From Perna viridis (lineage: Eukaryota), in NCBI GenBank assembly GCA_037379345.1, contig CM074519.1, forward strand, positions 124,001 to 188,000: a stretch of 64,000 nt of DNA, given 5' to 3'. Within the stretch, counting starts at the first letter, position 1. Each line of letters opens with the position of its first letter. Below, piece by piece: positions 15,801-42,424 of this stretch. The notes beneath the pieces were generated by a model that was not told the DNA's origin, ran no database searches, and saw only the letters and a list, made by a program, of their open reading frames with translations. The translations under genes were made by a program, and so were the position numbers.

Positions 15801-18800
15801 AGTAATGCAAATTTTTTTTTTTTCGGTCCAGCAGATTTTGTTAGGTTGCCAAACCAAATGTCCAACAGGTTGAAAAATGATTTCGCCAGGTTTGAACATC
15901 GTTCTAATTCTTAATCTTTCTTTCCAGACATTAAGCTTTGAAGAATAAGTATACATGTATCATTTTCATCTCTGGCAGTTTTCTGTTCATTAAACTTTCA
16001 ATAGTAATTTTGACTTTAAAAACTTCTGTGAATTACCTCGTGCCAATTTCCCTGACTGGACTCTTTTCTACAACAGAAAGTTTTCATGAATTTGACATAC
16101 AGATAGTACATGTATATAAGGAACAACACAGCTAATCATAAATACATCTTATGAGGAATAACACAGTGACTCCTAAATGCATCTAATGAGGAATAGCACG
16201 GTGATTCCTAAATACATCGAATGAGGAATAACACAGTGATTCCTAAATACACCTCATGAGGAATAACACAGCAATTCCTAAATACATCTAATGAAGAATA
16301 ACACAGTGATTCCTAAATACACCTCATGAGGAATAACACATCGATTCCTAAATACATCTAATGAGGAATAACACAGTGATTCCTAAATACACCTCATGAG
16401 GAAAAACACAGTGATTCCTAAATACATCTAATGAGGAATAACACAGTGATTCCTAATACACCTCATGAGGAATAACACAGTGATTCAAACACACTTTTAA
16501 TCAACACTTCTGAACATTTCTTTAAATAAAAAGAAATTAATAAAATGTCTATAAAACAGTAAAACTTAACATTTACACCTCATGTGTGGAATCAATGCCG
16601 TCAACAAACAGGAGAAAGTGAAAAACAGAAAATTGCAAGAACTTGCTTCTCTAATTTTGTTTCTTTTCTTTTTTTTTTCTTGGTGGAAAAGAAATTTCCT
16701 CGTCATTCATTGAACACCAATGGGTGGCCGTGGGCTGACATTCTAGGTTTTTGTCTCTTGGACATATACGCCATACCTTTTCTCATTATATTAAAACAGA
16801 CAATTTGTCAAAAATTCTAAATATAAGTACAACTGTGGTCAGACACAATAGTGTGTAGTAATAAAACACATGAGTGTACAATGAGGTATATTTATCTTGA
16901 GACATAGAAATTATATAATATACATTTTTGTAACATAGTTTACGTGTTAAAAGTGCCCTTTTAAAAATTTGCCCCCTTCTGCCCTTGAATCCTAGCTGAA
17001 CTTTTGTTGCTTATGCAAATAAGTTATTAGTGTTAAATCTAGGATTAAAAACGGGCATGGTAATTTTTTTTTTTCAAAAGGGAACTTTTTGCCACGATGT
17101 TTGATTTTTATGACACATTGATTGGTTTAAAAATCGACATATTATGCAAACTGTGTTGGTTTTACTGTAGTAATGTATGAATGAGACAATCACTATAGCA
17201 TTAAAGGGCCCCTTTCAGTTGAACAACATGTGCATTGCACTATTATAGATTGAAGTTTCTAAGCCCCCTATTTTGTGTTGGATTCCTCCAAATCTATCTA
17301 AAATTCTTAAGTTTTTTTTCAAATTAAAAAAAAAAAGAGAAAATTTATTTAAACTCAAATTCATTTCTACTATTTGAAAATTAATACATTGAATATTTGT
17401 TTTCTTCTTTCCATTAATGCCAGTTGAAGATGTCTTGAGTTAGTATTCATCATGTTCATATTGTGAACTTGAATTCTACAATTCAACAAGTATTTTTGGG
17501 TTAAATAAGTCTAAATTGGCTATTAAGACAGTATGCTGCTGTGTAGTATCGTGAGAACTTTCATTATTAAACATTATTTAATCTTTTACTTTTCATTAAA
17601 TGCTACCATGAGATGCAGTATATGAGGAAATGTAACAAATATTTAAGAATGTTGAAACTGAATTTCCAAAATCATCACTATTTGAAAGGAATAACATTCT
17701 TTTTAACTATTGCAAACAAAACTTTTGGGAAAAATACTGCATTGTTGAAATTACAGGAAATGTGAAGATTGCAAGGGAGGTAACACATTTTGTACAAACA
17801 TTTCTCATTTTAAAATTTGTTTACACACATGGTTCTACAAATTCAAGACCTGTTCAGATGACAGTATTGTCAAATTAATTAAGGAGTAGAATTTAATCTT
17901 TAAAAAATGATTGGATGTTCACAAAATTGTGGTAGATCCACTCGGGATTCATTTTCTAATTGTCAGACCCTAATCAGCTGATTGCTTCTCAGAGATTATT
18001 TTCCTGTCATAAAAAGTACCCTTAGGCCTTATCTATTTAGACAGCTATTAACACCATTTGTGAGATTAATGACTCTTTTAATTAAAGAAATGAGATTGAA
18101 ATGCGAATTACGGGTTTGATTACGGAGTTTTTAGGTAATTTTGACAAAATTTGACCTAAAAATCGTGTTAGGTAAACAGCAAAAATAGCGGTGAAGTTTC
18201 GTGGTTTCAAGAGGGCTAAAATTCTAACAGGGGCACATTTTCGCGACTGGAAAAGGCAATTAGTATGTTGGAAAAAGGGCATGGTGCCGCGCCATGCTAC
18301 TTAGCTTTAGATCTCACTAACCACTTCCGGGTCAAATGGCCACCCCCCTATGTAGTACCAAAAACACACTGAACCTAGACATATGCATTGTAAGTGCATT
18401 ATTTGTGTGTATTATGATTAAAAGTAGTCAAAATAAAGCTGAGAATGTGTACTTTAAAATCATATATGTAATTAACTACAAAAGTATATGAATATTGTTT
18501 ACATGTGTGAGTAATTTGCCTCCATGCTGTCAGTTAGCAGAACAGGTAAAAATGTGAATTTTCAGTATTATTTATTCAAGTAAATTTTGTGAAGAATTTC
18601 TACTATGATCGTACCATTAGCATCATGATTTTGGAAGCCTTATTTTCCAAGCTTCGCAACGGTATGCAGCTTTAAGATGTCATTTGTCCTGGGAATTCAC
18701 AGTGAGACTTTGAAAATTACTTTTTTAACATGTAAAGTAATGGCAAGGTTAGAAGTGGTTAGTGAGACCTTAGATTTAACCCTAGAGTTATTCTACTCTA

Positions 18801-21800: not shown

Positions 21801-24800
21801 AACAAGAATCCATTTACCACTTTGTGATTATTAGTAATAAAAATTGTGGTTTTAGAAAAAAAAAACTGCTCAAAGGGAAGAAACTCTATAGTAGGACAAA
21901 CATTTTTGGACAATTAAAATTGTTTATCAACTAATCAAATAAATTTTCTCCATAATTTATCATGAGTTTCAAACAAATTTCAAATTAAGTGATCCGCAGA
22001 TTGATATCCCAAATCATCAGTGACGTCTTAGTTCATGTCACAAGAGAAAAATGTTGTGACTTTCTGGTGGGACCCAGAGTTAAAAATAACTGAATTAATT
22101 TCACATGTGAATTATCATAGATTAAAACACAGTAATCATTTGTAAAATCTACTGCTATCAATATAGTACAAAATTCCTAATTCTACAAATCTTTAAACTG
22201 TAGATATAATTACTCTTAATTCTTTTCAGAAAGCAAATTAGTTTTTTTTTTTTTATTTTATTTATTTCCATAAAGAACTTCTACTATAAAGAAACTGACA
22301 AGTATTTGTTTTCCACACATAAACAACTTTTACCTGTAGTAAGTAAGGAATGGAGAATGTATTATGTATTTCTGTCAGACAGGAAACAGCTTTCTTCAGG
22401 AACTTGTTATAACTGTTAAAGTGAATATAATTGTGGTCTTTATCTAAGGACGCTAATACCATTGTAAGGTGTTCTACAACATTCTGAAACAAAAGCATTT
22501 AATGAATATGCTGGAACATATCTAGTACTTACAGGTACAAGGCCCTCATAAATACTGGAATAATTCAAACCTTTACTGGTAAAAGGCCCCTGTAAAAACT
22601 CGAATATTTCCATCCTTTACAGGTACAAGGCTACTACATATATACTGGAATACTCCATACTTTACAGGTAAAAGGTCCCCATAAATACTGGAATATTTCT
22701 AAACTATACAGGTAAAAGGTCCCCATAAATACTGGAATATTTCTAAACTATACAGGTAAAAGGTCCCCATAAATACTGGAATATTCCTAACCTTTACAGG
22801 TAAAAGGTCCCTGTAAATACTGGAATATTCAATACCAACAAGTAAAAAAATCTAGTTATTTTAATGAAAAAAATGTTTGCAAGAGCTATTAAAAGATCCT
22901 TTACAATTGTTTAAACGAATTTTATAAGAAGGACAAAAGTAAAAACCAAGGGTATTGTGGCTATTTTCTTTTATATTCAAATATTTCTAAGGGCATAACT
23001 GTTTATGAAGCAAGTGCAATGGTTCTTAAAATTCAAGTGAAAGTCACAAACTGTTATATTGAACTTGTATATATTTCATAGATCTATGTGGTTAATAAAC
23101 TGGTGAAGGTTGATGTTCTACTATACTTTAGAAAATAATATTAACTGTTAAGTTCAAAGAATTTAAGGCCTTATGAAAAATACAAATAACATAAATCAAA
23201 TGTTCCAAACCTTTAATTCATAGTTATTTGCCAATTCTTATCAGTTTGGTTATTTCACGTTTCATACATAAAAAATTGCGTCAGAAACATTTGATAGTGA
23301 TGTTTATTGTAATGCAGATTAGTTTCCTTGATAAATTCATTTTTTTTTTGTCGTGATCGGCAGTACGAATGAATAAAGAAACTTTAGTCATGGTTAATTT
23401 GGTGCTTTTGTCATGAACGTGATCCGTTTTTTTAAAACACAGTACTGATTCTGTATCACGGATTCCTTATGTGGGAAGTTTTAGAATCAATTCAACACTT
23501 CCGGTCATCATTGACCAAAGCATGTCATAGTGCAAGTACACAAAAATATTATCTGATTTTACTAAATAAGTGATAGATGGTGTGTATAAACAAATGTCAA
23601 CATCTTTCAATGACTTTATGTTATCTTTTAGGTGTGATCAGGCCAAACTCTTTTGTTTCACATAAAAAAAAAATAACATAGATTTTCAAATCTAAGCAGA
23701 ATGAGCTCAAAAAATGGGAATATTTGCATCAACAACAAGTGATCAAAATCTGCTCACAACAGCACAGATGCCACCTCCTGCACTCTAGATTTTCCAAATT
23801 TTCCGGACCCCCAACCTACCAAGCATGGCGCCACCTACTTTGTAACTTATTGAGAACCCTGTTCTATAAGGTAACTTTCAATACAACACCACTTTATTAA
23901 AGAATTTGCAAAAATGATTGAAAACCAACAATCACTTGAGTAAGTACAGTATACCATTGTGACTAACCTAAATACAATATATGAACTCACCCCCCCCAAA
24001 AAAAAAAAAATTTCCAGTGAGTGATGAAATGGCTATTTAGCTGCCATCCTGTCATCTGTAAATGGTAGTAAGGTTGAGTACTAACATACATGCACATATA
24101 GATACAAGACCTTTTCATTTTTATCTGTCTCCCACAGTCTGTTGAACACATCCTGTCCTGTGAGGAAATCATTGGCTCTGCAGCATACTAACACAGCCTA
24201 CAATATGAAGAAGTAGTTCATGTCATGGTAAGTTCACAACAGCCCTACTCATCATACTAACACAGCCTACAATATAAAGAAAACATTCATGTCATAGTTA
24301 GTTCATGACAGCCCTACATATAGCATTAACACCCCTACAATTTAAAGAGGATCATGTGATTGCAAGAGTAATCAAGGGAACCAAGGTTATAGCGGTAATC
24401 AAAAGAATGTAATCCAGAGACAAAAACCAGACATGGAAAACAGACATACACAACAAAGAACATAAAGTAACTAAAATCATACATACAAAGTAACAAAAGT
24501 AAATGAGCAACTTGGACTCCACTAAAAACTGGGAGCATGGACCAGGTGCACCGGTAGGGTAAGCGTCCTCTGCTTTTCTAGAAACACCCACCGAGTTGAT
24601 CATAAAAAGTCAAGTCCGGGGTAGACTAGATTAGATTAGGATAGCTCTGCATTTTAAATCTTAAAGGTTCAGCAGCAACAAATAAGCTGTTGCAAGCTAC
24701 GTCATGCAGGAAGATGATATGCGACAAACCTGAGAGAAAAAAACACCCTTCAAGTTCAAGTCATCATGCAAAAGCAATATACATGTTCATGTACCAAATA

Positions 24801-27800
24801 TCTAAGCATTTCTTTGATAGAAGCTAGTAAATTTCTTACAGAAATGTGTCACAAACAGACAAGGTCACTTAAGTGACTGCAATCAATATTTCATTCTGAA
24901 AATACCTTTTTCCAATTTGAAAGCAAGGGGCATACACTGTGTCCACCTTCATGAATGAATAAAACATGAAAAATGTAAGATTTTCTCCAAAAACTAAGAC
25001 CTTTTTATATAGGGGTTTTAAAAAAGAAAATGGATGGCTGTCAGATGTACATGTACATGTATGGACAAGGTAATTGCAAGACGCTCTAGTGAGTGGGAGT
25101 ATAGACAGAATGAAAAATTATTATACCTGTATTGTTTATACATGTACGTATCTACAATGCAACCTGATTATAATTTGTATGATAATAATATTGTCTGAAA
25201 TAATGTCTGGTTATCCTGTTAGGCTGATAGAGCAAGGTGTTACTTAGATGTAATCAGTTGCCCAGCCTAACTTGTGTTTTCCCCATTAAATGTGGAGAAT
25301 TTTGTTTTTACTTATTTCAGCTATCAAGACTTACACACTTCTTCTTTAAAGGATTTTTTTCTATTCCCAAGACTTTAATACATGAACTAGCTTTTTTTTA
25401 CTAATAAGTACATGTAGGTCTTCAGAGTCTCGCTCAATATGGCAATCACTTACTTGTTTTTTTACAGTAGTACGCAAAGTCTTCAGAGTCTCTATATGGG
25501 TCTCACTCACTAAGGACTCTATTACACTGACATTTTTCAGAGCTTCCTCTAGTGCAGTAAGGTCACTATTTAAAGTATATCTAGTCGTATGATCACAACC
25601 ATCAGACAAACGGCACAGAAACAATAAAATCTGGACCTTTTGTTTCCGTTCAGTTGAATTGGAATATGGTTGAGTGACCACACCTGAAATAAACATTAGA
25701 CAGTGTTGTGACCTGTAGAAATTTGTTTGTTGCTTGGTACTTGGTGGATGAGGGTCTCATTGGCTATCATACCACATCTCCCATTTTTATATGTCAGTTA
25801 CCTTCAACTTAAGTTACATGTACATGTACACACAAATGTGTACCACAACTTGGTTAATTCCTATACACCAGTACAGTACATACAGATGTGCAGCTGGAAT
25901 AGATTGGTTTTTCAGGAGTTGAATATATGACAGGGTCATGTAAAATGTGATTCTTGGTTGAAAGGCCTACATATTTTTATTTTTGTTATTTTGTTTAAAT
26001 TGTTATAGTTAACAGAAATTGACATGTGGTTTTTCATATAACCCGTGCTCATAGGAGATAAAAATTATATAGAATGCACTGTAGATTTCAAAATTAAGGG
26101 AAATAACTCTGTAAATGGCACTCAAATACAATAGAATCTACTGGAATTTCAATGTGGATGATCTCCTAAGAGCAGGTAGATTTGAATGAATAATTACACA
26201 TTTCATAGTATAGACCCATAAAACAACCTAATTACAAAAATAAAAATATGAAGTCTTTTTGGGGTGTATCACATTCTTCAGATTTTGCATGATTCGTACA
26301 AAGACAGCTACTTATATATATGGCATTTATTGCTTTGACAGACTTTCCCCATTAATCCTCAATTAGTGCCTGCTGCAGCATATGGCCATGAGAGAAAAGA
26401 TTTATTCAATTTATATTGATAAGGTGAAGACTACTTGTAGGTGATTTGGTCAAACGATTAAGGAATTATGTAATTTTCTGCAACCAGCTGGATACATACA
26501 TTTGCACTGTTTCTATTTATCTTTCTTTAATTCAAAATGATGTTAGTGTAGGTATATACATTGTATCTCTTCTATGTAGCCTTTTAATTTAGCAATGATT
26601 ATACCTTTTATGATAGTGATCAAGTGAAACCAGATTCTTATGGAGGAAGAACAGCATGTAATTGTAAACAAAAGCCAGCCATTTCATTTCGATACAATTT
26701 TATTGAACCCCATTAAGTTATCAGTATTTGGCCAGTTGGATTTGCGTTTCCACAGAAGAGCATCTTTAAGGTCAAAGGGTAAAAAGCGAAACTATACCAA
26801 CTGCCTTGTAAAAATATTTACAAAACTTACGCCGACTAAGGAGGTTAGTCATGACTAAGGGTGTTAGAAAGTTTCCATGACTTTTGTTATCCTAACAACC
26901 CTACCCTTAGCCATGCCGACATGACTAACCCCCTTGGTAACGGTTAGTTTTACAAATTTATTTTTGGTCATTTTCTTAATTTTAAAATAATTCCAAATTC
27001 AAACAATACCTTGTTTTCAGTTTCTTCATGCTGAAAATGCTGTTATATTCAACTTTAATTAAACTTTGCAGTTTAAAATAGCCACAAGTATTTGCCCAGG
27101 GTTGAGTTACCTTTAACTATAGTCAGTTTTGAAAGGCTCACATTAAATATTTTCATATGATTGACACTTACCCAAAAATTAATTTGGAGGGTAACTAATT
27201 AAGAATCTTATCGGCACTATCACAATTATCTTCTGATTGGCTTCAGTCATAAATATGTCACTGGTTTATATAAAATGAATCCCGAATTGATGGGTTTCTC
27301 ATGCATAAAATGAAAATTTTCTATGCTGATAATGGTAATAAAAGTTAACCATGGTGGGCAACAATTTTATCATGACCCAGACTTTTCAACCTTGGCGGCC
27401 CACCATGCTTAAACATCTCATGAAGTAACCTGGTAGCAGAGTCCGCGAAAACTTGTTTTGCCCTGTCAGTCATGGGACTGGCTGGTTAGATTGTCCAGTC
27501 AGTCCCACAGATATTTAGCCAGTCCCACTTATTTTCGTTAATTTACTGTTAGTGTATTAAAATTCTTTAATGATTTTATGGTATGCCAAGTTGCTTTTCA
27601 TTTTGTTGTATTGACTTGGTTGTAAAGTTTTTTTCTCAATCTGTTTTCAGAAATGGCTATTAATACAGGTTTCCCATTTTGCATGAGATTAGTTTAGTAA
27701 CTTTAGTTTGTATCAATATAATTATCTGAATATCAATAATTTTATTTTACCATAATCATTCAACAGCACATTTTTTTAATCCATGAAAAGTTTTCTGCTT

Positions 27801-30800
27801 CAATCTGCTCAAAGTCAAACTCATCACCACTGTCCATTTCCCCATTTGCTGCTAAATTGTAACTCTTGACTTTTTCTGTTTTTGTGATCTAACATTAAAT
27901 TAACAAAAAAAATAGATCGAGCTACATTTCACAGCTATTTTCCCATGACCATCATCATCTTTTATAGGCGTTGTATTATTAGTCTGAACATATGACAGTT
28001 GCATTGGCCATATGCCAGGAACGTCAGTGGTAAAGTATTGAATAGGCCACATAAGCACGATGTCGACAATCTGGTACCCAAAATTGAATCGGAAATGGAA
28101 TTACGTAAACCAGTCAACACCTAATAACTAAACAAATAATCCAACCAACAAAGCACTGTGACGGCCATTTTTTACTAACGGTCCTTGGACCTGCGCTCAT
28201 GATAAAAAAATCAGACAACCCTATTTTTTAACGGTCAGGACCGGCAGGACGGACTAATTTCGCGTACTCTGTAGTAGGTATACATGTAACTTGTTTTCCA
28301 TACTTCTTTTTTTGTTTGTTTTTGTAAATGTAGAAAGAAAAATGTAGTATGAACATGAAGCTAAGATATCATAAAATGGGAAAGGTTTATTTCGACATTA
28401 GCAATAATTTTTTTAATTGTGATAATTTTAAGTCAAGTTGTCATTGTTGATTAAGTAAGTACAAGATCTCATTTCACTCCATATAATGTGAGTTGCAAAT
28501 CTCTTTAATATTAAGCACCGTGAGTTCTATGGTTATAACCTGTAATACCTTAATTTCCCTTAAGGTTCCCCAATATACTAACAAAAAAAAAGTCATGCCC
28601 CGGAGGTAAAAAATTTACTGGCCTTACAGAAAAAACTCATTGTTTCCTTAAATAACACAATAAAGATAAAAAGGTTAAGGTTATGTTTCAATAAAATTAA
28701 CTTCATCTTTTCAAAAGATTAAAAAAAGGCTACTGGTTTTGATGAAATCTCACCTAAAATTCTGAAAATAGCTGCAACAGTAGTAAAACATCCAATTACC
28801 AACCTGATCAACATGGCTTTTGAAACTTCAGTTTTTCCAGACAAATTAAAAATAGCAAAGGTGGTACCAATTCACAAGAAAAACAGCACACTAGAAAAAG
28901 GAAACTACAGACCAGTCAGTGTACATGTACTACCAACCATCCCAAAACTTTATGAAAGAGCTATTGAATCTCAGATGTGTGAATTTTTTTATACCAAATT
29001 TAACATTTTCTTGTCTGCTTTTAGACCTGGCTACAGTTGTCAAGATATTTTGATCAAAATTATTGGACTGGTGTAAATCTTTAGATAAAAATAAGTTCAC
29101 TGCTGCTATACTGATGGATCTGTCAAAAGAGTTTGATTGTCTACCACATGATCTGCTCCTGCTGAAATTGATAAGTTATGGTTTGTCTGAAAATGCCCTA
29201 TCTTTATTAAATAGCTATTTTAAAAACAGGAAGCAGTGTGTTAAAATTGGTTCTATATGCAGTCCTTTTTTGGACATCTATAATGGGGTTCCAAAGGGGT
29301 CAATCTTGGGACCTGTCCTTTTTAATATCTTCATTAATGATATATTTCACTTTATTTCAAAAAGTGACTTACATAACTATGCTGATAACAATACTTTATC
29401 ATATAGCAGCAATGATCTACAAGATATTGTAAACACTCTGGAACAGGAGAGTAGTATTTTAATCAAATGGTTCTCAATAATCATATGAAAGCCAATCCTG
29501 ACAAGTTTTAGGCTATTGCGACTGGTGGTAAGACTCAAAAGAGTACATTTTTTTTAATTTAGATGGTAATGATATCCTCTGTGAGGATGAAGTAAAGCTA
29601 CTTGGTATAATATTTGATTTTAAATTGAACTTTAATAGCCATATCTCTAATATACATGTATGTAAAAAGGCAACACAACAATTAAATGTATTAAAAAGAA
29701 TTGGAAATCATCTCAGTAAATTTGGTAAACTTACAATATATTATTATTTTATACTGGCAAATTTCAACTATTGTCCATTAGTATGGCATTTTTGTAATGA
29801 AAGCTGTACAAAAAAGTTAGAAAAGATTCAAGAAAGGGCTTTATGCCTTATTTATAAAGATGATGAAAGTACATACATGTATGAAGAGTTGTTTTAAAGT
29901 CTAAGATGCCATCCTTAACAGTTAGACGATTGAGATTTTTATCTATACATGTACACGTATATAAAATAATAAACAAACTTACTCCTGTATACTTACATGA
30001 TATGATAACTGTTAAAGAAATTTCTTACCCTTAGGTATACAAACTTGGTGAACATACCAAGAGTAAACACAACCAATTATGGCCTGCACTCTGTCAGCTA
30101 TGGGGCAGCTAAACTGTGGAACTTTCAAATGAACTAACAGGGGACATGGGCCTTGATCAATTTAAAAGTTTGATCAATAAGTGGGAGGGGAAAGGATGTT
30201 CTTGTTCCTTTTGCCAATAGTTTGGCTTACCCAACTTGATAGATGCAACATCATCTCCTTAAAATCTTTCAATTTATTATTTTAATCTTGCTGGCATGTT
30301 AATTTTAATGTTTTTAGCTGCTTAATAACATCTGCTTTGAAATTTAGTCTGCATTGCTTTTATTTTAGTGCTTTTTTTATGTGTTTGATTACTTGCATGT
30401 TATTTATAATTTGTATGTCATATTGGGTTTCAGTTAATATGTCTTATGTTTTATTTATGTTGATTTTAAAAGAGCTATTGTATTGAATGATTTATATCAA
30501 CTTTAAATAAAGTTTACTTGACTTGCCTTTAAAAGAAGTATATAGAATGTAATACAGTACATGTATGATGTGTTTTTAAAACGTTTGGGAAAGCTGTGGA
30601 TGTACGTATGTGTATCTCCACTACTCCACTCTTGCTGTTGTCAAGAACCGAACCTGCCTCGGAAAAACTATAACTCCTATTGTATTATCCATCTAAAACC
30701 ATAGCTTTTCTAAGATAGGAAAGGCAATCATTTTCTTTTAGAAATTTACAGCTGTCAGTTGCATTTCAATTTAACATCACATGATATGCATAAAATATTC

Positions 30801-31314
30801 CCAACAAAAAATCTCTTCCGACCCCACCTCTCTGTGCCAAAGGGGTTTTAAATGTCCTATACTATTTTTATGAGTCTTGCACAGATGGTACATGTACATT
30901 GTAGCATTGTAGGAAAGGCTAATGATTCTCGCTGATTTAGGCAATGCCTACTCCATATTTACAGGTCTATGATTATATATGCCACAATTCATGTATACTA
31001 TACTACTCCTGTATGTGATTGTAAATGTATAAAGTTGATACTAAATCGAAATTAATCTATCTATCTACATGTACATGTATGTGTAACAATTGTGTCTGAG
31101 GATCGTTCAGAGGGAGCTTTACAATTACAATTTACAGATTCACTAACATAACTTTTACCCAGTCAAAACAATTACACTGAATAAAATCCCTGGTGGTCTG
31201 TAGATTGATTTCATTTGTTCTGCAGAATTCTTCCCATGCATAATGGTAGTAATAATCTAAGATCCAACTATTTGCTCTTTCCTCCACCAGTGTTTTTGTA
31301 TTTTCTCCCGCCAT
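9565..31314 (-). CDS. TERF: Telomeric repeat-binding factor (TRF1/TRF2 family), 12 coding exons, 418 aa: join(31176-31314, 25454-25683, 24111-24197, 22334-22483, 21519-21571, 20234-20345, 19380-19422, 16037-16067, 15384-15433, 13083-13110, 11055-11128, 9565-9824)
   Basis: All introns GT-AG with compatible phases; total 1257 nt open. TRFH: ANSWILDYYYH...LFLCRLSDG...TALEEAL...VKKQ|AVLVCC...DVFNRLW...FNSYNKF...YLLQ. Myb telobox: WNYSE...GVGNWSKI...RTGVQLKDRWR. Small linker exons are less certain than the domain exons. Confidence 0.88.
11055..11128 (-). CDS. TERF: TRF exon 11 (TNEKLQEVKDRRELSDDGSGPDEH)
   Basis: tttcag acceptor, A|gtaata donor, phase 2 to 1. Confidence 0.75.
11643..13042. repeat. 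52/43-bp intronic minisatellite, interrupted by a retroelement 3' fragment at about 12409-12617
   Basis: Unit gatactttacactactgaagccttgtcctgactcagtgaccaggcaataatg, with 43-bp variants. Confidence 0.9.
13083..13110 (-). CDS. TERF: TRF exon 10 (28 nt, DVSESENNS)
   Basis: Strong pyrimidine tract ttctttttttcttcag, AG|gtattg donor, phase 1 to 2. Confidence 0.7.
15384..15433 (-). CDS. TERF: TRF exon 9 (AKRRKLDSVNNNSLCE; basic NLS-like motif)
   Basis: cttgtag acceptor, G|gtatta donor, phase 2 to 1. Confidence 0.72.
16037..16067 (-). CDS. TERF: TRF exon 8 (31 nt, KSPVREIGT)
   Basis: ctgttgtag acceptor, AG|gtaatt donor, phase 1 to 2. Confidence 0.68.
16120..16487. repeat. 35-bp intronic minisatellite, about 10 copies
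   Basis: Unit gaggaataacacagtgattcctaaatacacctcat. Confidence 0.9.
18863..19410. repeat. 42-bp minisatellite derived from the 3' end and donor of TRF exon 7
   Basis: Minus-strand unit TCAGTTAATGCCAAACATCACCAGTCA-GTAAGTACATTCTAG; interrupted at about 19190-19320. Confidence 0.88.
19380..19422 (-). CDS. TERF: TRF exon 7 (KKKGQVNTCRTSQV)
   Basis: tctttcag acceptor, A|gtaaga donor, phase 0 to 1. Confidence 0.72.
19765..19969. mobile_element. MITE (same family as 60067-60277), left end degraded
   Basis: Subterminal inverted repeats cgtgaggtaccaatttt / aaaattggtacccacg; right end tttcacagta. Confidence 0.65.
20234..20345 (-). CDS. TERF: TRF exon 6 (STFSHETIERYIEKNRIRMLSPREQQNLEMKLKLIREA)
   Basis: catttcag acceptor, GCA|gtatgt donor, phase 2 to 0. 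Confidence 0.78.
20938..21535. repeat. About 44-bp minisatellite derived from the 3' end and donor of TRF exon 5
   Basis: Unit acctgtgttttatgtcattggaagtgttgcatgacaaatttttt; its first copy overlaps the exon end ATGACATTAAACACAG|gtaag. Confidence 0.88.
21519..21571 (-). CDS. TERF: TRF exon 5 (QADYIVKKCNLTDDIKH)
   Basis: aatttcag acceptor, AG|gtaaga donor, phase 0 to 2. Confidence 0.8.
22334..22483 (-). CDS. TERF: TRF exon 4 (C-terminal part of TRFH)
   Basis: tttcag|NVVEHLTMVLASLDKDHNYIHFNSYNKFLKKAVSCLTEIHNTFSIPYLLQ|gtaaaa. Confidence 0.85.
22505..22832. repeat. 44-bp intronic minisatellite, about 7 copies
   Basis: Unit tacaggtaaaaggtccccataaatactggaatatttctaaacta. Confidence 0.85.
24111..24197 (-). 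CDS. TERF: TRF exon 3 (AVLVCCRANDFLTGQDVFNRLWETDKNEK)
   Basis: ttgtag acceptor, AAG|gtcttg donor; aligns to TRF1 AIAVCMENGNFKEAEEVFERIF. Confidence 0.85.
24364..24626 (-). mobile_element. 3' fragment of the Penelope-like retroelement family
   Basis: Near-identical to 53324-53586; ends GGTTCCCTTGATTACTCTT. Confidence 0.8.
25454..25683 (-). CDS. TERF: TRF exon 2 (TRFH core)
   Basis: tttcag acceptor, CAA|gtaagt donor; QILLFLCRLSDG...DLTALEEAL...LRTTVKKQ aligns to TRF1 ICQFLTRIAAG...RITPLESAL...IQNLIKIQ. Confidence 0.9.
28720..30525 (+). mobile_element. 5'-truncated, degenerate CR1/L2-type LINE in TRF intron 1 (antisense to TRF)
   Basis: RT motifs KVVPIHKK, NYRPVS, MDLSKEFD, GVPKGSILGPVLFNIFIND, YADNN; frameshifts and stops; 3' end aataaagtttacttgacttg. 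Confidence 0.9.
31176..31314 (-). CDS. TERF: TRF exon 1 (MAGENTKTLVEERANSWILDYYYHYAWEEFCRTNEINLQTTRDFIQ)
   Basis: atcATGG start with in-frame TAG 21 nt upstream; T|gtaatt donor phase 1; matches the first TRFH helix (WxLDF/Y). Confidence 0.85.
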
Positions 31315-32149: not shown

Positions 32150-33130
32150 GGAACAAATACATATAGATCTGACAATGGGTTACCCATGGTAGGAGTAAAG
32201 ATATAGATATAATATTGGGTTAACAATGGTCCCGCATAGGAACAAACGTATAGATACAGCATTGAGTTACCCATGGTGATATATAGTAACATACATATAG
32301 ATATAATATTGGTTACCAATGGTCCTCTATAGCAACATAAATAAGATATAAAATTGGGTTGCATATGGTCCTCTTTAAGAACATACATATAGATATAACA
32401 TCGGGTTACCCATGGTCCTCTATAGATGCAAACATATAGATATAAAATCGGATTACCCATGGCCATATATGGGAACATACATATAGATATAGCATTGTGT
32501 TACCCATGGTTCCATATATGAACAAACTTATAGATATAACATTGGAATTCCTTTGGTACCCAATAGAAAATACAAATAGATATAACCTTCGGTTACCCAT
32601 GGTCCTCTGTAGGAACATACATATAGATATACAATTGGGTTACCCATGATCTTCTGTAATAACATACATACAGATATAACATTGGGTTACCTATGGTTCT
32701 CTGTAGAAACATACATATAGATATAACACGTGGTTACCCATCGTCCTCTGTAGGAAAATACAAATAGATTTAACATTGGGTTACTCATGGTTCTCTATCA
32801 GAACATACATAAGATATAATATTAGATAACCAATGGTACCTCATAGGAACAAACACATAGATACAATATCGGGTTACCCACGGTACACTGTAGGAACGTA
32901 CATAATATATAATATTGGGTTATCCATGGTCCTCTATAAGAAAAGACATATAGATATAACACTGGTTACCCGTGGTCCCCTGTAGGAACATAAATATAAT
33001 ATAGATATAACATATGGTTACCCACGATCCCCAGTTTGAACTAACGTTTAGATATAACATTGTGCTGCCCATGGTCCCCTATTGGAACATACTTGTGGAT
33101 ATAATATACTTATATAATATAGTGTTACCT
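32150..33130 (+). repeat. 47-bp satellite A (left arm)
   Basis: Unit gggttacccatggtcctctgtaggaacatacatatagatataacatt, about 20 diverged copies. Confidence 0.9.
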
Positions 33131-34599
33131 CAGAACCCCTTTTATATATTTTACAGCTTTCGTTGAATCGGTCAGAAGAAACTGGACAATGCGAACAATA
33201 TTCCAATGTCTATGTTTCAGACATCTTGACTTGAAAGACCGGGGAAGAACTAAATGATCAGGTATTGCTTTTTTATAACCACAAAGAATGAAACGTAATT
33301 GTGCTCCATTTTGATTTATAACTTTTTTTCTAATTTACTGTTTATTTACTCTTAGTGTAGCTATGCTATGCAAACACTATAATTTTAAAATGATAGAGTA
33401 AACTTCTATCACAATTACCAAAATTTATTTCAGATGTATATACGTGTATTAATCCTGATACATTTAGTTATAGAAAACAAGTATATCTTTACAAATCATG
33501 TTGTCTAGAAACGGTTTGGATTGTTATTGGCTGTATTAGTCTGTTTGGAGGAATGGGTTTGTCTTGTAGCATATGAAGTCAAAATTTTGTTTTTATATTT
33601 TGTGTGTTTCTGCAATCTTTCTATTTTTCGTTGTCGATTGTTTTTAGCTTATCCAGATAATCACTACCCATGCCTGGTTATTGACAAGAAGGTATGACTA
33701 AGTTAAACAGTTAGGTTTTAACATGCTTATTTACTTATATGAATGACGGGGAAGTACCCCGACCCTTGATTTTAGCGTACGCTAAAAGAAATGACAGCGT
33801 CTCCTGCCTAAAATTTTGAAACTTTACGCAGTGAATCCTGCGTACATGCTAAATTCAGGAATCTTGCGCCTGCAGAAGTATTGCTTACGCTCTAAAAACG
33901 AGCTGCGTAAAAAAGGGGGAGGGGTTACACACGCACAATGACATTTTTCATCACTGGAATCATGTTATTGATTCACGTTATGATTTTATGTTAAGTGTAT
34001 AAAGTTACAGTTCTCATTTGTAGGGTATTCAGATTCAGATTTGTCAATATATCAAGGTTTTGTCATTCTGAATGTCTACCTCAAATTAGGGTTCCAATGC
34101 TCTGTTTTTTATAATCAAATTATCTGCTTTAATTAGTTTAGGAGTGCTGTATCCTAAGTTGTCTATATTCTGTTTAGAAATGCTTTGTGCAATATTTCAG
34201 GTGGTCTTTTGCCTAAACAGTTATATTCTGACAGACATATGTAGGGGTAAGACTTCTGTAAAGTGGTCCAAAAAAGTACATTTTCACATTTGCTGCAAAA
34301 TCAAACATTAGAAAAATCTGGTTGGAAAAATGAAAGTGTCTTTATAAGTCTTGTGCAAAAGGCATTATAATTAAATTAACATCACTCAGATTGTACTAAT
34401 TACATCTAGATAAATACTTTGAATCAAATGATGTAATTTTAAATAAACATATCATAAATAATTAATTATTAAAAGGAGTAACTCCTTTATACACAAAACT
34501 TTGTACAGCTTAGATCATTTTCGCTCTACTGGTAAGGTGAGGTCCTTTCGGCTATTTGTTCTCCATCAGCTCTTGACATATTTGGTCGTTCGGAAAATA

Positions 34600-34968
34600 C
34601 ATCTCACAAGGATCTAGATACTCCTCTAATCTATCTATATATTTCTAACAAGCATCTAGTAATTTTGCAGACGCATCCAGTTGCTCCTTACAACCACCTA
34701 GATACTTCTCAGGAGCATATAGATGCTTCTCACAACTATCTAGGTACTTCTCACATGTATCTAGATGCTTTTTACAACTATCTAGATACTTCGCACAACC
34801 ATCTAGATGCTTCTCACAACACTATAGGTGCTTCTTACAACTATCTAGTTACTTTTTAAGGCTTCTAGATCCTTCTCAAAACTATCTAGAAACTTCTCAC
34901 AAGTATCTAGATGCATGCCTTATCCACATGTATCTAGATACTTCATACAAGCATTTAGACACTGCTAG
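34600..34968 (+). repeat. 21-bp satellite B (left arm)
   Basis: Unit tctagatacttctcacaacta. Confidence 0.85.
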
Positions 34969-36159: not shown

Positions 36160-36700
36160 CATGTAAATGCTTCTCACAACTATCTAAATATTTTTCACAC
36201 ATATATAGATAATCCTCACAATTATATTGGTACATGTACTTCACACGAATACGATACAACCAAATAATATCATCGATGTATCTTTGATAAGTATCTTCAT
36301 AGTTGTGACAAGCATTTACATGTAGATGCTTTTGCAAATACTTAGATACTTTTGATAAGTACATGTATCTAGATGCTTTTGCGAAGTATCTAAATATTTG
36401 TGAGAAGTATCTAGATTATACGTGCGAAGTATCTAGATACATGTAAGAAGTATCCAAATATATAATTTGTTAGAAGCATCTCAACAGTTGTGAGAAGTAT
36501 CTATATAGTATGAGAAGCATTTAGATGCTTTTGCGAAGTATCTAGATACTTTTGATAAGTGTCTAGATGTTTGTGAAAAGCATCTAGATGTTTTTTGAAG
36601 TATCTAGATACTCGTGAGAAATTTTTGTGTATCTAGGTACTTGTAAAAAGCAGCTAGATACTAGTTAGAAGTATTTAGATAGTTTAGAGAAGTACCTATG
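36160..36700 (-). repeat. 21-bp satellite B in inverted orientation (right arm)
   Basis: Unit ttgtgagaagtatctagatag, the reverse complement of 34600-34968. Confidence 0.85.
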
Positions 36701-37235
36701 TGTATGATCCTATATGGGGTCAATGTTCACCCAATGTTATATCTATATATGTATGTTCGTATAGGGACCATGGGTAACCCAGTGTTATATCTGTATGTAT
36801 GTTCCTATAGGGGACCATGGGTAACCCAGTGTTATATCTATATGTATGTTCCTATAGGGGACCATGGGTAACCCAGTGTTATATCTGTATGTATGTTCCT
36901 ATAGGGGACCATGGGTAACCCAGTGTTATATCTATATGTATGTTCCTATAGGGAACAATGGTCACCCAATATTAAATCTGTATATGGAGGTTCTTTTAGG
37001 GACCATCGGTAACCCAATGTTATATCTATAAATATTTGTTCCTACAGTGGACCATGGGTAACCCAGTGTTATATCTATATGTATGTTCCTATATGGGACC
37101 ATCGGTTACCCAGTGTTACATTTATATGTATGTTCCTACAGGACACCGTTGATAACCCAATGTTATATCAATATGTATATTTCAATAGGGGACCATGGGT
37201 AACCCAATGTTATATCTATATGTATTTTCGTATAG
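36700..37235 (-). repeat. 47-bp satellite A in inverted orientation (right arm)
   Basis: Unit gggaccatgggtaacccagtgttatatctatatgtatgttcctatag, the reverse complement of 32150-33130. Confidence 0.9.
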
Positions 37236-38340: not shown

Positions 38341-40076
38341 GTAATGCACTGGCGAAATTGTCACTTCTGTTTTGCTTGCCTCCCATCCTTAGCCCAACCG
38401 AATTTGGCAGTTAGCGTTTTGGTATATTATTTTATTTAATGAAGCATAACCAGTTTAGGTAGAAGGAAATTAATAAAGACGAGCAGTAATTTAGAATTTG
38501 CTTTCAGATCTGGTAAAACAGAAAACAATGTTCATAATCTACTTTAAGAAAATGCTAAAGCAAATTGTATTAGAAATTTAACACTTCATAAGGGAATCAA
38601 TCTAAACCTTAACTATATCAACATCAACAACAAAACAAAGCCTTTTACAAGTACCATATAACGGCGAGTTACACACCAAGAAACAAACATTTTCTTGCAT
38701 CTGTAGTATAAAGATTTTAGTGACAGTATAAACTAACGATAATGTCAATTATGAATGTAAGTGTACATTGAAGTGTTTTATAGTGTAGATAGAAGCTTGA
38801 TGAAACTAACATTGTTGCAACATCCAAGTATTGATTCATTTCTTTATTTTCACCTAAATATCTTAATTCAGCTAAATCTAAATCTAAATACTAAGAGCTT
38901 GTCAATATATGCAGACTTTGTATGGCGCTCGACATTTAAGTCGTTACTACAGACGTTGTGGTCGTCATTATGAACTCGTAGATTGTTACGGTGTATCCAC
39001 AGGTCCATGCTCTCAGGTAATAATGGAGTCCGAGTTGCTCATTTACTTTTTTATTTGTATGTACTATTTTGTTTATTTTATGTTCCTTGTTGTGTTTGTC
39101 TGTTTTCTATGTCAGGTCTTTGTCCCTTGAATACATTCTTTTGGTTTCCGCTAGAATCTTGGTTCTCTTGATTACTCTTATATTTGTAAGATCTGCTAAT
39201 CTAGTATCAGCTTAAGAAAAACGCATATTTTGTGAAAACTGCACTGATTTAAAAAAGTATTCTGATGTTGTTAAAAAGTTAAATTTTGAACAATAATTTT
39301 GTCGAACTTGGAGAATAGTTTTTTCAGCAGATCATTTGACTACCTAATGGAACCAATTTTGAACAACTCTTCGTTGATTTTTTTAAATTTTTGTATGAAA
39401 TCAGGTTTCGCTATTTTACTAGGGTTACTACAGAAAAAGGAGAAGTTAGTCCTAGTTTTTCAATTTCAGTTTCCGTCATATAGACAGATACATGTAATCA
39501 TATCTGAAAAAAAACATTATTATCAGGATTACTTATATTTTATTTTTCCAAACGAACGACATTAATCTTCTTCTGTTTCATACCGCATAAAGTTATGATA
39601 AACATAATGATTTTGAATTTCAAGCCTCAATAGTCACATTACAAGTGAGTAAAATCTGGTAAGTATTAAGTTCGGTTGGTTGTCAAATCGAGACGATATG
39701 AAATCTGACTGCAGATGTCTTTTCTCATTTGTTAGATAATTTTCATTTTGATCAAGCAAATTGTTATAACGACCAGAAAACTTCTGTAGTATTGATATCA
39801 ACAAAAGGTTCAACATACCACTACCAGCTTGTTAATTTGACCGTGTCCTGGTTCTATAAAAAGTCAGTATACATATTCCAGGCAATACAATAACGGATCA
39901 AATGTAGTATTGACTTGAAATGTTGATTTAATGCCACGAAGATAGGGAAAACCCAGAGGACAAAATCATCATGTTCGTCATAGCTAACATAAAGGTAGTT
40001 GAGTATGCAAAATATTGTTTTACTATCATGAAGCTTCATAAACAGGAATAATGTATTTATTTCATATTCTTCTTGT

Positions 40077-42424
40077 TTATGCGATACAGCAGTAACAGCT
40101 ACCACAATAAAGCAAACAAGGGCAGCCTATACAATAAAAAAAATGAAAGTTAGTAGCATTGCATATGAGACTTAAAACTAAGTAAAACGTCTGTTGATAT
40201 GCTAATTATAACAACCTTCAAACTAAAGAAACATGTGTCTCCTTATTTTGATAAATGGAATGTATTTGAAAGAACAGCTCCTAAAATCAAATACCTTTTT
40301 TAAACACAGTTTGAATTATAAAGAACGATTTGTAGAAAACGCATAATTACTTGTACTTGATAGATGGAATCGAAGTTTTTAAACTACTCCTTCGGTTTGC
40401 CGAAATGTTATATACTTACTACAAAAAGGTGTATTTATTGCTAATTCAATATAAAATGTATTATGGCATTTATGGAAATAACTTAAATACAGAGGCAATG
40501 GTGATTAGTAAAAATATGGCGATACTGAATTATTCGTTTTAAATAACAAAATTTTTGCATTTATATTGTTGAATAAAATCTCGAGAAGATGTTATGTCGC
40601 ACGAGCTTGCGAGCGAGCAATATCATGTTCTGTGAGGGGAAATATTAACCAATATAAATGCAATACACCTTTTACTGTATAGTACGAATATTCCAAACAT
40701 TACTATGCCTTTTTATTATCCTTTGGAGAGATGTATGGGCAATAAAACCAGGTAAAACACGTTTGTCTCTACTCTGTCACTTTTATACTTCCAGTAGTTA
40801 CAATATTTACGATGAAAGATTTATTATAATTGTTAATTTCTGTACACTGAGAAAGGCTACTTTAACAGTGATAGGTTTCGGGAAGGTGATGGCAATAGTT
40901 CCAGGAAACCCCCTGAATCCGGAATTGATTCTTTTACAAATTTATTCAATATTGAACATATCTACTAGTACTTCACATTTCAACTAGTTTAATATATGTA
41001 ACACTACCATTTTTTCTCTCATTCGTCCATTAACTCTAAAATTAATGTCAGTTAAAATTAATCTCAACAAATGAAATGCATTTTATCATGATCGGCATCC
41101 GAAATTTTTCGTTGACATTTGATAACAATGCTATATTATCTGAGGAAATTTCGGATCGGAACGCACATGTACAAGGACTTGTTATTCGAGGGCTAATATT
41201 GGACAAGTGATACAGTAAACAATGGGAGAGTATAACGGCACACTCGGTTTTTTATCAAGTACTTTTTTTATATCGTGAAGATTTGTACAATTTTATTTGG
41301 CTGTATTTTCTGTACAAAACTGAAAATCTTGGTATGCTCTGTATTTGTATACATACAATAAACAGATATACACGTCCAAATGACCGCTTGATTGTCTGAT
41401 TGTACAAACTCTCCGAGAAATCCAGCAACGAAATGATAGAGAATTCCAAGAAAGGATGTGAGTAAAGTTAGCAATGTGATAAAGGATGTGATATCAAAAT
41501 GTTTGATACAAGTCAAATATTTTTTAGTCTTTATTAGACATTCAATACTTCTTTATTACACTACTGACTATATGATAAAATAATATATATTGCACGGTTA
41601 TTACTTCAGATTTGTTTTTTGAAATTAAAAAGCAAATTATTGTAATTCAATATATTGGTCAATTTTAAACCTGCACATTTACCAATTGTAAGTTAAGAGC
41701 AAATATGGAAAGACAATGTTACAAATAAATGGTTATGTTGATGATTGTACTAACCTATAGTAGGAATATCTTGAGTTTTAGCTGGTGAATAGCAAATGAC
41801 CAGAATGATACTGAAATAAAGACTCATCGTCATAACCAAAACCATTAAATTCCTCAGCAATTCGATAACCTATAAAATGAGTAATTTAGAAGACTTTGGT
41901 GATATATATATTCAAGTTATTTCATGTAATAATTATGGTTTTCAAACTCGTTTGTATAATTTGTTTTACTTATAAAAGATTTTTTTTAAAGAATAATATT
42001 ATATGATTTCCTGAATTAAATTTTAAAAGTTTTCGCTTTGGATTATCTGTATTGAGTCTTATGGATTTTTTTAGATTGAAAGCAAAATATTGAATTTCCT
42101 TTTGACACAAGGACACATAAACTTGAATAAAGACCCTCTGCGAACAGATGTGAAAGAAAGGAATTCATTAAAAAGCAGTTTTTTTGTATTCATTTGTTAG
42201 CGAAAAAAATGCTTTAAGTACTGAAACTTGAAATTTTTTACACTCCAAAATGTTTAAATCTTTTTTAACCCGTACATGAAAAAAAAATACACTCCGGATG
42301 ATTTTTTTTCTTTATTTTAAAGTACACAAGTAGAAGTGTCAAGATTACTAACAATTTCGATAGAAATGTATTAAAGTTACTAGAGTGCCAGCTCTTTTAC
42401 TTATATAATCTGTTTACTTACCAT
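40077..42424 (-). CDS. Small secreted cysteine-rich peptide gene 2, 55 aa: join(42422-42424, 41755-41869, 40077-40126) = MVIELLRNLMVLVMTMSLYFSIILVICYSPAKTQDIPTIGCPCLLYCGSCYCCIA*
   Basis: accATG|gtaagt; ttttatag|115-nt hydrophobic exon|gttagta; ttttttttattgtatag|Cys exon with TAA; AATAAA at 40056-40061; same architecture as gene 1. Confidence 0.82.

What the first reader, a model, noticed from the sequence alone, without database searches (positions are those of the whole stretch)
28922..29953. Recurrent CATGTA insertions at TA sites create TACATGTA in a dead LINE
Seen: TACATGTA at 28922, 29653, 29874 and 29946. Removing CATGTA restores typical LINE ORF2 text: NYRPVS-V[HV]LP, HISNI[HV]CKKA, STY[MY]EEL. 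So the motif looks inserted (TA to TA-CATG-TA), not mutated in place. Known: TA-CA-TG-TA is a described excision footprint of Tc1/mariner elements with CA...TG ends. Inference: four events in about 1 kb imply very heavy insertion/excision cycling or another templated mutational process.
Basis: partly seen in the sequence, partly recalled or inferred. Interest (0 to 1): 0.75.

Follow-up and report, generated by a model that had tools for sequence, protein, structure and literature searches.

The report
Six-letter transposon excision scars, locally clustered
A dead retrotransposon copy carries three, perhaps four, identical six-letter scars of the kind left when a cut-and-paste jumping gene leaves a TA site, and the same scar is spread across this animal's genome in about 230,000 copies.

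Summary
All four TACATGTA octamers are at the stated places. Against 21-28 sister copies of the LINE, three (28922, 29653, 29874) are private 6-bp insertions at a TA. Their junctions are unique in the 723-Mb genome. The fourth (29946) is already in the family consensus; the window copy instead has a private 6-bp CACGTA directly after it.

The octamer is not special to this LINE: there are 40 in the window (2.3 expected) and 232,827 in the genome. In two unrelated repeat families, 6-bp insertions are mostly TA to TACATGTA or one letter off. The +4 and +5 scar forms described for Tc3 and Sleeping Beauty are not in excess. Sites show a mirror-symmetric purine-TA-pyrimidine preference.

The genome holds young Tc1-like and pogo-like elements with TA|CA...TG|TA ends. 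Scars cluster: 15 lie in 6.1 kb around the LINE (2.0 expected).

Best reading: excision scars of TA-targeting cut-and-paste elements, with both 2-nt overhangs kept. No occupied allele was seen, so the responsible family is not identified. Reads did not resolve polymorphism at the LINE sites.

The scan noted this motif before on other pieces of this genome (17 notes, one followed up, same conclusion).

The parts
28721..30531 (+). 5'-truncated, decayed LINE copy (reverse transcriptase fragment) that hosts the four sites
   Evidence: RVT_1 hit on ORF 29063-29485. 51 matches in the own genome. Its extent comes from sister alignments (L001 1522-3332 = window 28721-30531). It has 48 substitutions in 1526 aligned bases against the family consensus.
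28924..28929 (.). private 6-bp insertion CATGTA at a TA (GTG-TA-CTA becomes GTG-TACATGTA-CTA); placement is ambiguous within 28922-28929
   Evidence: Absent from 21 of 21 covering sisters. The 27-nt junction is unique in the genome at up to 3 mismatches.
29655..29660 (.). private 6-bp insertion CATGTA at a TA (ATA-TA-TGT)
   Evidence: Absent from 28 of 28 covering sisters. The junction has one other genomic match at 3 mismatches, which is not a LINE copy.
29876..29881 (.). private 6-bp insertion CATGTA at a TA (ACA-TA-TGA)
   Evidence: Absent from 23 of 23 covering sisters. The junction is unique in the genome.
29946..29953 (.). ancestral TACATGTA of the LINE family (not an insertion in this copy)
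   Evidence: Present in the family consensus and exact in 16 of 23 covering sisters.
29954..29959 (.). private 6-bp insertion CACGTA at the second TA of the ancestral octamer, one transition away from CATGTA
   Evidence: Absent from 23 of 23 covering sisters. The 14-mer TACATGTACACGTA occurs 398 times genome-wide. 3 of 3 other instances fetched lie in DNA unrelated to the LINE.
25048..25061 (.). double scar TACATGTACATGTA in the same hot zone
   Evidence: Present without difference in a single-copy contig of another sample (X2 record 9).
25815..25828 (.). double scar TACATGTACATGTA
   Evidence: Covered without gaps by X2 record 11.
31066..31079 (.). double scar TACATGTACATGTA
25001..31100 (.). 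hot zone: 15 TACATGTA in 6.1 kb, including the four in the LINE
   Evidence: Sliding-window maximum. 15 seen against 2.0 expected at the genome mean of 0.322 per kb. The zone was chosen after seeing the data.

Best explanation
The hexamers are excision scars. A cut-and-paste DNA transposon of the Tc1/mariner/pogo kind integrates at a TA and duplicates it. Such elements target TA and have ends 5'-CA...TG-3'.

When the element later leaves, the transposase cuts the non-transferred strand two bases inside the element. Each flank then keeps TA plus a 2-nt 3' overhang (CA on the left, TG on the right).

The host's end joining keeps both overhangs and joins them end to end. TA becomes TA-CA-TG-TA, a net gain of six letters.

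Shown here:
- The events are insertions at TA.
- The inserted letters are the same at unrelated sites.
- They dominate the 6-bp insertion class.
- The sites share a mirror-symmetric purine-TA-pyrimidine context.
- The genome holds young elements with TA|CA...TG|TA ends.
- The scars are clustered.

Inferred:
- An element once sat at each site.
- The stagger is 2 nt.
- Both overhangs are retained by the host's joining machinery.
- The cluster of 15 scars in 6 kb, with 3-4 in this LINE, reflects repeated local hops along this chromosome's line of descent.
For: **Insertion at TA.** Three of four sites are private 6-bp insertions. Their junctions are unique in the genome.

**Share of insertions.** LINE family: of 65 insertions against the consensus, 7 are 6 bp long. 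Four are exact TA to TACATGTA and three are one letter off. There are only 2 five-bp and 1 seven-bp insertions. Second family (21 copies): 2 of 4 six-bp and 2 of 8 seven-bp insertions are CATG-type, one of them with a filler T. Further filler variants at TA (CATTG, CAGTTG, CATTTTG) appear in the extended LINE alignment.

**Specificity.** In 164 kb there are 63 TACATGTA against 6-9.4 expected under Markov orders 1-3. Of the 16 palindromes TA-XY-rc(XY)-TA, only this one and TATATATA are in excess.

**Genome scale.** 232,827 copies, against 94,142 of the reversed word.

**Target context.** In 74 non-redundant sites, position -1 is a purine in 55 and position +1 is a pyrimidine in 55. Half-site chi-square is 29.7, p = 1.6e-6. 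Tc1 has a symmetric target consensus CAYATATRTG (passages of PMC9635669).

**Agents present.** 113 DDE_3 and 118 DDE_1 matches, many with open frames. One Tc1-like family has copies 97-98.7% alike and ends TA|CACTC...GAGTG|TA, with 66 ends in the genome. A pogo-like family has ends TA|CAGT...ACTG|TA.

**Literature passages.** Tc1/mariner excision leaves 2- or 3-nt 3' overhangs and scars, and Sleeping Beauty and Tc1 hop locally (PMC3878927; 10.1101/659086).

**Clustering.** Bin counts are overdispersed (D = 2.3-4.6, p about 1e-5). The window copy has 4 six-bp insertions per 48 substitutions, against 3 per 1738 in the 29 sisters (Fisher p = 2e-5).

**Age.** There are 0 scars in 15.9 kb inside young elements, against 5.1 expected.
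Against: - No occupied allele was seen at any site. None of the 29 sisters has an element at these TAs. The public-run contigs did not bridge the LINE sites.
- The scar forms named in the passages I read (TACATA/TATGTA for Tc3, C(A/T)GTA for Sleeping Beauty) are not in excess: TACATA 102 against 92-126, TATGTA 101 against 85-113, TACAGTA 15 against 14-20, TACTGTA 22 against 15-23. I found no passage that names TACATGTA as a scar.
- No resident TA|CA...TG|TA element was detected in the window by my inverted-repeat scan, against 37 scar loci. The one young Tc1-like family has only about 33 copies.
- Enrichment in flanks of resident elements is not significant: 9 against 4.9 expected, p = 0.064.
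- Some TACATGTA arise by point mutation. L006 and L027 gained it by T to C from TATATGTA.
- The clustering statistics for the LINE and the hot zone are post hoc, on a place picked for its cluster.
Confidence: 0.75

Rival explanations
1. The scars come from an unidentified family whose ends are CATG...CATG and whose transposase cuts with a 4-nt stagger, as recalled for Minos. The two CATG overhangs are self-complementary. They anneal and are ligated into a uniform TA-CATG-TA.
For: The product is very uniform. Only the +6 form is in excess, and the +4 and +5 forms are at expectation. Non-complementary 2-nt overhangs would be expected to give mixed products.
Against: A scan of the window and all loci then held found TA-flanked inverted-repeat elements starting CACT, CAGT, CATA and CAAA. 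It found none starting CATG apart from chance pairs of scars. Filler variants (CATTG, CAGTTG, CATTTTG) fit two separately joined ends better. The 4-nt stagger of Minos is recalled, not checked in a call.
Confidence: 0.12
2. The octamers arise in place by point mutation from near neighbours such as TATATGTA, or are kept by selection as a binding site. No insertion is involved.
For: Two sister copies (L006, L027) gained TACATGTA by a T to C change at the site homologous to 29653. One octamer of the four (29946) is simply ancestral.
Against: Three of the four in the window are length changes of exactly 6 bp against 21-28 sisters. A dead LINE is not a place for selection on a motif. The excess over third-order Markov expectation is 6.7-fold.
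Confidence: 0.03
3. Replication slippage or another locally templated repair process duplicates or copies nearby letters. An example is snap-back synthesis at a break.
For: Double units TACATGTACATGTA occur 3 times in the window. The event at 29954 sits next to an existing TACATG. The flanks of the three sites partly resemble the motif (TAC, TATG).
Against: At 28922, 29653 and 29874 the ancestral sequence has no TACATG or CATGTA to copy. The inserted letters are identical although the flanks differ (GTG|CTA, ATA|TGT, ACA|TGA). Other TA-XY-rc(XY)-TA palindromes, which snap-back would also give, are not in excess.
Confidence: 0.04
4. Assembly or sequencing artefact.
For: None found.
Against: Single-copy contigs from other samples carry the octamers, without gaps, at 25048/25054 and 25139 (X2 record 9), 25409 and 25815/25821 (X2 record 11), 28281 (X1 record 3, X4 record 28) and 30558 (X2 record 16). 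The motif appears in many unrelated contexts.
Confidence: 0.01

Closest known systems
Tc1/Tc3 excision footprints in Caenorhabditis elegans
   Same: TA target that is duplicated. Element ends CA...TG. 2-nt staggered cut leaving 3' overhangs (passages of 10.1101/659086 and PMC3878927). Symmetric target preference around the TA (CAYATATRTG; passages of PMC9635669).
   Different: The commonest Tc3 scars named there are TACATA and TATGTA (+4, one overhang kept). Here those are at expectation and the +6 form with both overhangs kept is the one in excess. Beyond the TA, only positions -1/+1 (purine/pyrimidine) are significant here.
Sleeping Beauty / Frog Prince footprints
   Same: TA target, scar made of overhang letters between two TAs, local hopping (Table 1 and passages of PMC3878927).
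   Different: Their scar is C(A/T)GTA (+5, from 3-nt overhangs that pair with a central mismatch). TACAGTA and TACTGTA are not in excess here.
Minos 6-bp footprint (recalled, not checked in a call)
   Same: Net gain of six letters: TA plus four element letters.
   Different: There the four letters come from one end through a 4-nt stagger. Here the four letters CATG could equally be two from each end. No CATG-ended element was found.

Membership tests
Excision footprint of a Tc1/mariner/pogo-type (TA-targeting, DDE) transposon | Extra letters lie between two copies of a TA that was single before | tested here: met
   Sites 28922, 29653 and 29874: sisters have one TA, the window copy has TA-CATG-TA. 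The same holds in L017 and L057.
Excision footprint of a Tc1/mariner/pogo-type (TA-targeting, DDE) transposon | The extra letters are the terminal letters of the element's two ends | tested here: met
   Resident Tc1-like (TA|CACTC...GAGTG|TA) and pogo-like (TA|CAGT...ACTG|TA) families end in CA...TG. This shows compatibility. It does not link the scars to one family.
Excision footprint of a Tc1/mariner/pogo-type (TA-targeting, DDE) transposon | An element-occupied allele exists or existed at the same TA (in a sister copy, another individual or a related species) | tested here: inconclusive
   No sister copy is occupied at these TAs. Contigs of four public runs did not bridge the LINE sites and listed no 6-bp length difference anywhere in 25001-31000. 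No related genome was available.
Excision footprint of a Tc1/mariner/pogo-type (TA-targeting, DDE) transposon | Scar form matches a form described for the family (+4 TACATA/TATGTA for Tc3; +5 C(A/T)GTA for Sleeping Beauty) | tested here: not met
   Those forms are at expectation. The form in excess is +6. I found no passage naming TACATGTA as a scar. The older Tc1 papers were not held.
Excision footprint of a Tc1/mariner/pogo-type (TA-targeting, DDE) transposon | Mirror-symmetric sequence preference around the target TA | tested here: met
   Purine at -1 in 55 of 74 sites and pyrimidine at +1 in 55 of 74. Half-site p = 1.6e-6. Positions -2 to -8 are not significant.
LINE retrotransposon (host sequence) | Reverse transcriptase domain and many dispersed, 5'-truncated, diverged copies | tested here: met
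   RVT_1 E = 2.1e-12. 51 matches at 80-93% identity on many contigs. No clade assignment was attempted.
Hexamer microsatellite / slippage product | New unit is a tandem copy of a unit already present at the site | tested here: not met
   There is no pre-existing TACATG or CATGTA at the three sites. For 29954-29959, next to the ancestral octamer, it cannot be excluded.

The most novel reading that the evidence does not exclude
In this animal nearly every germline excision of a TA-targeting element is repaired to one identical 6-bp scar. The genome therefore carries a countable fossil record of roughly 2 x 10^5 past excisions. That far outnumbers resident elements. Kilobase-scale hot zones, like the 15 scars in 6 kb here, would be trails left by elements hopping locally again and again along one chromosome lineage. 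Scar counts per substitution could then measure cut-and-paste mobility through time and along chromosomes, even where the elements themselves are gone.
Probability: 0.45. Interest if true: 0.7.

Novelty: new variant of a known kind. Interest (0 to 1): 0.55.

Why it matters
Excision scars of Tc1/mariner elements are textbook knowledge from genetic assays. They are normally treated as rare and heterogeneous.

Here one uniform scar is the dominant 6-bp insertion class. It makes one octamer about 6-8 times too frequent across a 723-Mb genome, adds in-frame dipeptides to coding sequence, and clusters strongly.

If the reading holds, three things follow:
- Scars give a direct, datable record of DNA-transposon turnover, which is otherwise invisible once elements leave.
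- Their uniformity says something about how this animal's germline joins non-complementary 3' overhangs.
- Their clustering gives a natural read-out of local hopping.

The result also warns annotators that this octamer's excess is a mutational signature and not a regulatory motif.

Tried and rejected
**Resident culprit in the window.** Scans for TA|CA...TG|TA inverted-repeat pairs gave only chance pairs of scars and hits inside nested tandem arrays at 32.2-37.2 kb. The 3.8-kb inverted-repeat element at 53324-57103 does not end in TA|CA. No ORF of 130 aa or more in the window was longer than 219 aa, and I did not test the ten listed for transposase similarity.

**Other enriched 8-mers.** GCCTTGTC, CCAGGCAA, TACAGACG and TACAGGTA belong to tandem arrays and are not scars.

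**Split sister copies.** Those I inspected, L020, L023 and L026, hold a 128-bp MITE with other ends or unrelated DNA. None has a TA|CA element.

**First target-site table.** The table was contaminated by two ancestral LINE octamers present in many sisters. I discarded it and recomputed on 74 clean sites. The apparent signals at -2, -3 and -6 fell below significance.

**Reads.** The LINE is covered only by short, high-depth family contigs. Polymorphism at the three LINE sites therefore stayed unchecked.

**The CACGTA variant.** I asked whether the window copy inherited it from a subfamily. Three other places holding the same 14-mer turned out to be unrelated DNA. Its 398 genomic copies fit decayed double scars. 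The tool's reversed control (335) also contains ACATGTAC and is not neutral, so I draw no enrichment claim.

**Flanks of resident elements.** 9 scars against 4.9 expected, p = 0.064. I do not count this as support.

**Age.** One-letter neighbours of the octamer total 192 against 164 expected, while exact copies are 63 against 8.9. This is too noisy for more than 'many scars are not brand new'.

**Literature.** No paper in the held library ties TACATGTA to transposon scars or reports a genome-wide excess. Searches: (listings and abstracts only, except the passages cited). Supplements were not consulted and could hold scar tables. I did not try to name the organism.
Full report
**Observation.** The four TACATGTA octamers are at 28922, 29653, 29874 and 29946. 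They lie in a decayed LINE fragment, about 28721-30531 on the + strand. One of its ORFs hits RVT_1 at E = 2.1e-12. The fragment has 51 matches elsewhere in the same 723-Mb genome.

I aligned it with 29 sister copies.
- At 28922, 0 of 21 covering sisters carry the six letters.
- At 29653, 0 of 28 carry them.
- At 29874, 0 of 23 carry them.

In each case the sisters have a single TA where the window copy has TA-CATG-TA. The flanks differ between sites: GTG|CTA, ATA|TGT and ACA|TGA. The 27-28-letter junctions of these three sites are unique in the genome at up to 3 mismatches. The single extra hit for the second site is unrelated DNA. So these are three private insertion events and are not inherited from a subfamily.

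The fourth octamer is different. It is in the family consensus and exact in 16 of 23 covering sisters. What is private there is a further 6 bp directly behind it (CACGTA, 29954-29959), absent from 23 of 23 sisters.

**More than chance, and not special to this LINE.**
- The window has 40 TACATGTA. The mean of 100 shuffles was 2.34 and the maximum 8.
- The contexts are unrelated to one another.
- It is the top 8-mer that is not a simple repeat.
- Ten arbitrary 10-kb pieces from ten contigs hold 23 against 3.5 expected, ranging from 0 to 6 each.
- The whole genome holds 232,827, or 0.322 per kb. The same letters read backwards occur 94,142 times, and that control is itself inflated by overlap with scars.
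- Markov models of order 1-3 on 164 kb predict 6-9.4 where 63 are seen. About 2 x 10^5 copies genome-wide are therefore in excess (my extrapolation).

**Is CATGTA over-represented among insertions?** Yes. In the LINE alignment there are 65 insertions against the consensus. By length they are 40 of 1 bp, 4 of 2, 4 of 3, 3 of 4, 2 of 5, 7 of 6, 1 of 7, 2 of 8, 1 of 9 and 1 of 13.

All 7 six-bp insertions are TA to TACATGTA or one letter off:
- 4 exact: three in the window copy and one in L017.
- 3 one letter off: CACGTA in the window copy, CATGTT in L017 and TATATG in L023.

A second, unrelated family serves as a replicate. It is about 840 bp long, sits at window 27430-28272, and I aligned 21 copies covering 17,887 bases. 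In it, 2 of 4 six-bp insertions are CATG-type (L057 exact, L067 one letter off). So are 2 of 8 seven-bp insertions (L066 exact after realignment by eye, and L066 TA-CATTG-TA). The other two six-bp insertions, both in L070, are not. The extended LINE alignment adds TA-flanked variants with filler letters: CATTG, CAGTTG and CATTTTG. Its 5' part is full of tandem repeats, so I use it only for these examples.

**What kind of process.** The inserted letters are constant while the flanks vary, so they are not copied from the site. Of the 16 palindromes TA-XY-rc(XY)-TA, only TACATGTA (63 against 8.9) and the microsatellite-like TATATATA (80 against 18) are in excess. CA/TG is therefore specific.

The ancestral sites share a mirror-symmetric context. 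In 74 non-redundant sites, -1 is a purine in 55 and +1 is a pyrimidine in 55. Half-site chi-square is 29.7, p = 1.6e-6. Positions further out are not significant. My first table was contaminated by ancestral LINE sites and is withdrawn. A two-fold symmetric preference centred on a TA is what a transposase dimer gives. Tc1's consensus is CAYATATRTG (passages of PMC9635669).

The genome has the agents:
- 113 matches to DDE_3 (150 of 176 candidates scored), many with open 360-aa frames.
- 118 matches to DDE_1 (150 of 158 scored).
- No match to the mariner model. That search also found nothing in its control genomes, so it shows little.

One Tc1-like family has copies 97-98.7% alike with ends TA|CACTC...GAGTG|TA and 66 ends genome-wide. 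A pogo-like family ends TA|CAGT...ACTG|TA. Other small TA|CA...TG|TA elements turned up in the sampled loci.

Review passages state that Tc1/mariner excision leaves 2- or 3-nt 3' overhangs, that end joining turns these into scars between the duplicated TAs, and that Sleeping Beauty and Tc1 hop locally (PMC3878927; 10.1101/659086; PMC7827188).

**Where it departs from the described cases.** The same preprint names TACATA and TATGTA as the two commonest Tc3 scars. The review's table gives C(A/T)GTA for Sleeping Beauty. Here those forms are at expectation:
- TACATA: 102 against 92-126.
- TATGTA: 101 against 85-113.
- TACAGTA: 15 against 14-20.
- TACTGTA: 22 against 15-23.

Only the +6 form, with CA and TG both kept, is in excess. 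I found no passage that names TACATGTA as a scar. The classic Tc1 papers are not held.

Two sub-models remain:
- **(a) 2+2.** Two non-complementary 2-nt overhangs are joined end to end by the host. Why this animal would do so uniformly is inference. A role of family X polymerases, which C. elegans lacks, is my conjecture and was not tested.
- **(b) CATG ends.** An unknown family with CATG ends and a 4-nt stagger has self-complementary overhangs that simply re-anneal.

The filler variants and the absence of any CATG-ended element in the DNA I scanned favour (a). The uniformity favours (b). I put (a) at about 0.6 and (b) at about 0.12.

**Clustering.** Scars are unevenly spread. Window bins of 2, 4 and 8 kb have variance/mean of 2.3, 3.3 and 4.6 (p about 1e-5), although TA density is flat. 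There are none in 39.5-56.1 kb.

The stretch 25001-31100 holds 15 against 2.0 expected at the genome mean. The 1,032 bp of the finding hold 4 against 0.33. Both places were picked after seeing the cluster.

The window's LINE copy has 48 substitutions and 4 six-bp insertions. The 29 sisters together have 1738 substitutions and 3 (Fisher p = 2e-5). The second family gives about 4 per 1668. So this neighbourhood has taken scars at some 40 times the family-wide rate per substitution.

All three double scars of the window lie in the hot zone. A scar offers two TAs with favourable half-sites, G-TA and TA-C. This fits repeated local hops along one chromosome lineage, which is an inference.

Scars are absent from 15.9 kb inside young resident elements, against 5.1 expected (p = 0.006). 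The flanks of those elements hold 9 against 4.9 expected (p = 0.064), which is not significant.

**The fourth event.** TACATGTA followed by CACGTA is one transition from a double scar. The 14-mer occurs 398 times in the genome. The 3 other instances I fetched are in DNA unrelated to the LINE. It is therefore a recurrent sequence and not a subfamily marker. I read it as a second scar at the ancestral octamer's TA followed by T to C, or as a variant junction. Slippage cannot be excluded for this one.

**Reads.** Contigs of four public runs from other samples were laid on 25001-31000. No 6-bp length difference was listed. Single-copy contigs carry the octamers unchanged at 25048/25054, 25139, 25409, 25815/25821, 28281 and 30558. 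Those scars are real and are not private to the assembled individual. The LINE itself is covered only by short high-depth family contigs, so polymorphism at its three sites stayed unchecked.

**Plausibility of the numbers (inference).** About 2 x 10^5 neutral scars accumulated over roughly 0.05-0.1 substitutions per site. This needs on the order of one scar-leaving germline excision per hundred gametes. That is high but within what is recalled for active elements. It agrees with scars greatly outnumbering resident elements: 37 scar loci and no detected TA|CA...TG|TA element in this window.

**Verdict.** The excision-scar reading is the best supported (about 0.75). The responsible family, the stagger and the repair route are not shown. 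The mechanism is of a known kind. The uniform +6 product, its genome-wide scale and the kilobase hot zones are the new aspects. The scan had already noted the motif on other pieces of this genome: 17 notes, and one follow-up with the same conclusion.

Noticed in passing
window 32201-33104 and 36696-37235; 34597-34912 and 36365-36620: Nested inverted structure. There is an outer pair of 47-bp tandem arrays in opposite orientation and an inner pair of 21-bp arrays, about 5 kb overall, like a foldback-type element. No ORF of 70 aa or more listed inside exceeds 132 aa. Four TACATGTA sit in the inner array region (36231-36445).
   Followed up: partly
window 18306-18779: An element of about 470 bp with inverted ends. 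It has dispersed copies 97-99% identical on many contigs. It also forms a long tandem array of period 1047 bp on contig C8 (about 46.96-47.03 Mb; dozens of units listed). It looks very young.
   Followed up: no
window 53324-57103: A 3.8-kb unit bounded by inverted repeats of about 135-190 bp (92% complementary). The ends are not TA|CA.
   Followed up: partly
window 4900-5550, 11700-13050, 22530-22800: Several unrelated minisatellite arrays (units of about 44-52 bp). They account for other over-represented 8-mers (TACAGACG, CCAGGCAA, TACAGGTA).
   Followed up: partly
window 25932-26315: Very high-copy short repeat. The first look gave 9033 candidates for window 25600-28700, and copies of this part are 93-95% alike. 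The contig depths in public runs are enormous.
   Followed up: no
L020:1373-1500: A 128-bp MITE with GGCCCTTTTCACAAAAAA... inverted ends is inserted in a sister LINE copy. The target duplication is not TA.
   Followed up: no
L006 and L027, site homologous to window 29653: These two sister copies gained TACATGTA by a T to C change from the consensus TATATGTA. Point mutation therefore also feeds the octamer count.
   Followed up: yes
window 39500-56100: No TACATGTA at all in 16.6 kb, the stretch where other notes place small cysteine-rich peptide genes. The cause (constraint, chromatin or chance) was not examined.
   Followed up: no
G000:C3:15780778-15799157 and G000:C5:41349690-41376683: Tc1-like elements or fragments repeated at regular spacing (about 8.5 kb and about 2.6 kb). 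Transposon copies are carried inside larger tandem duplications.
   Followed up: no
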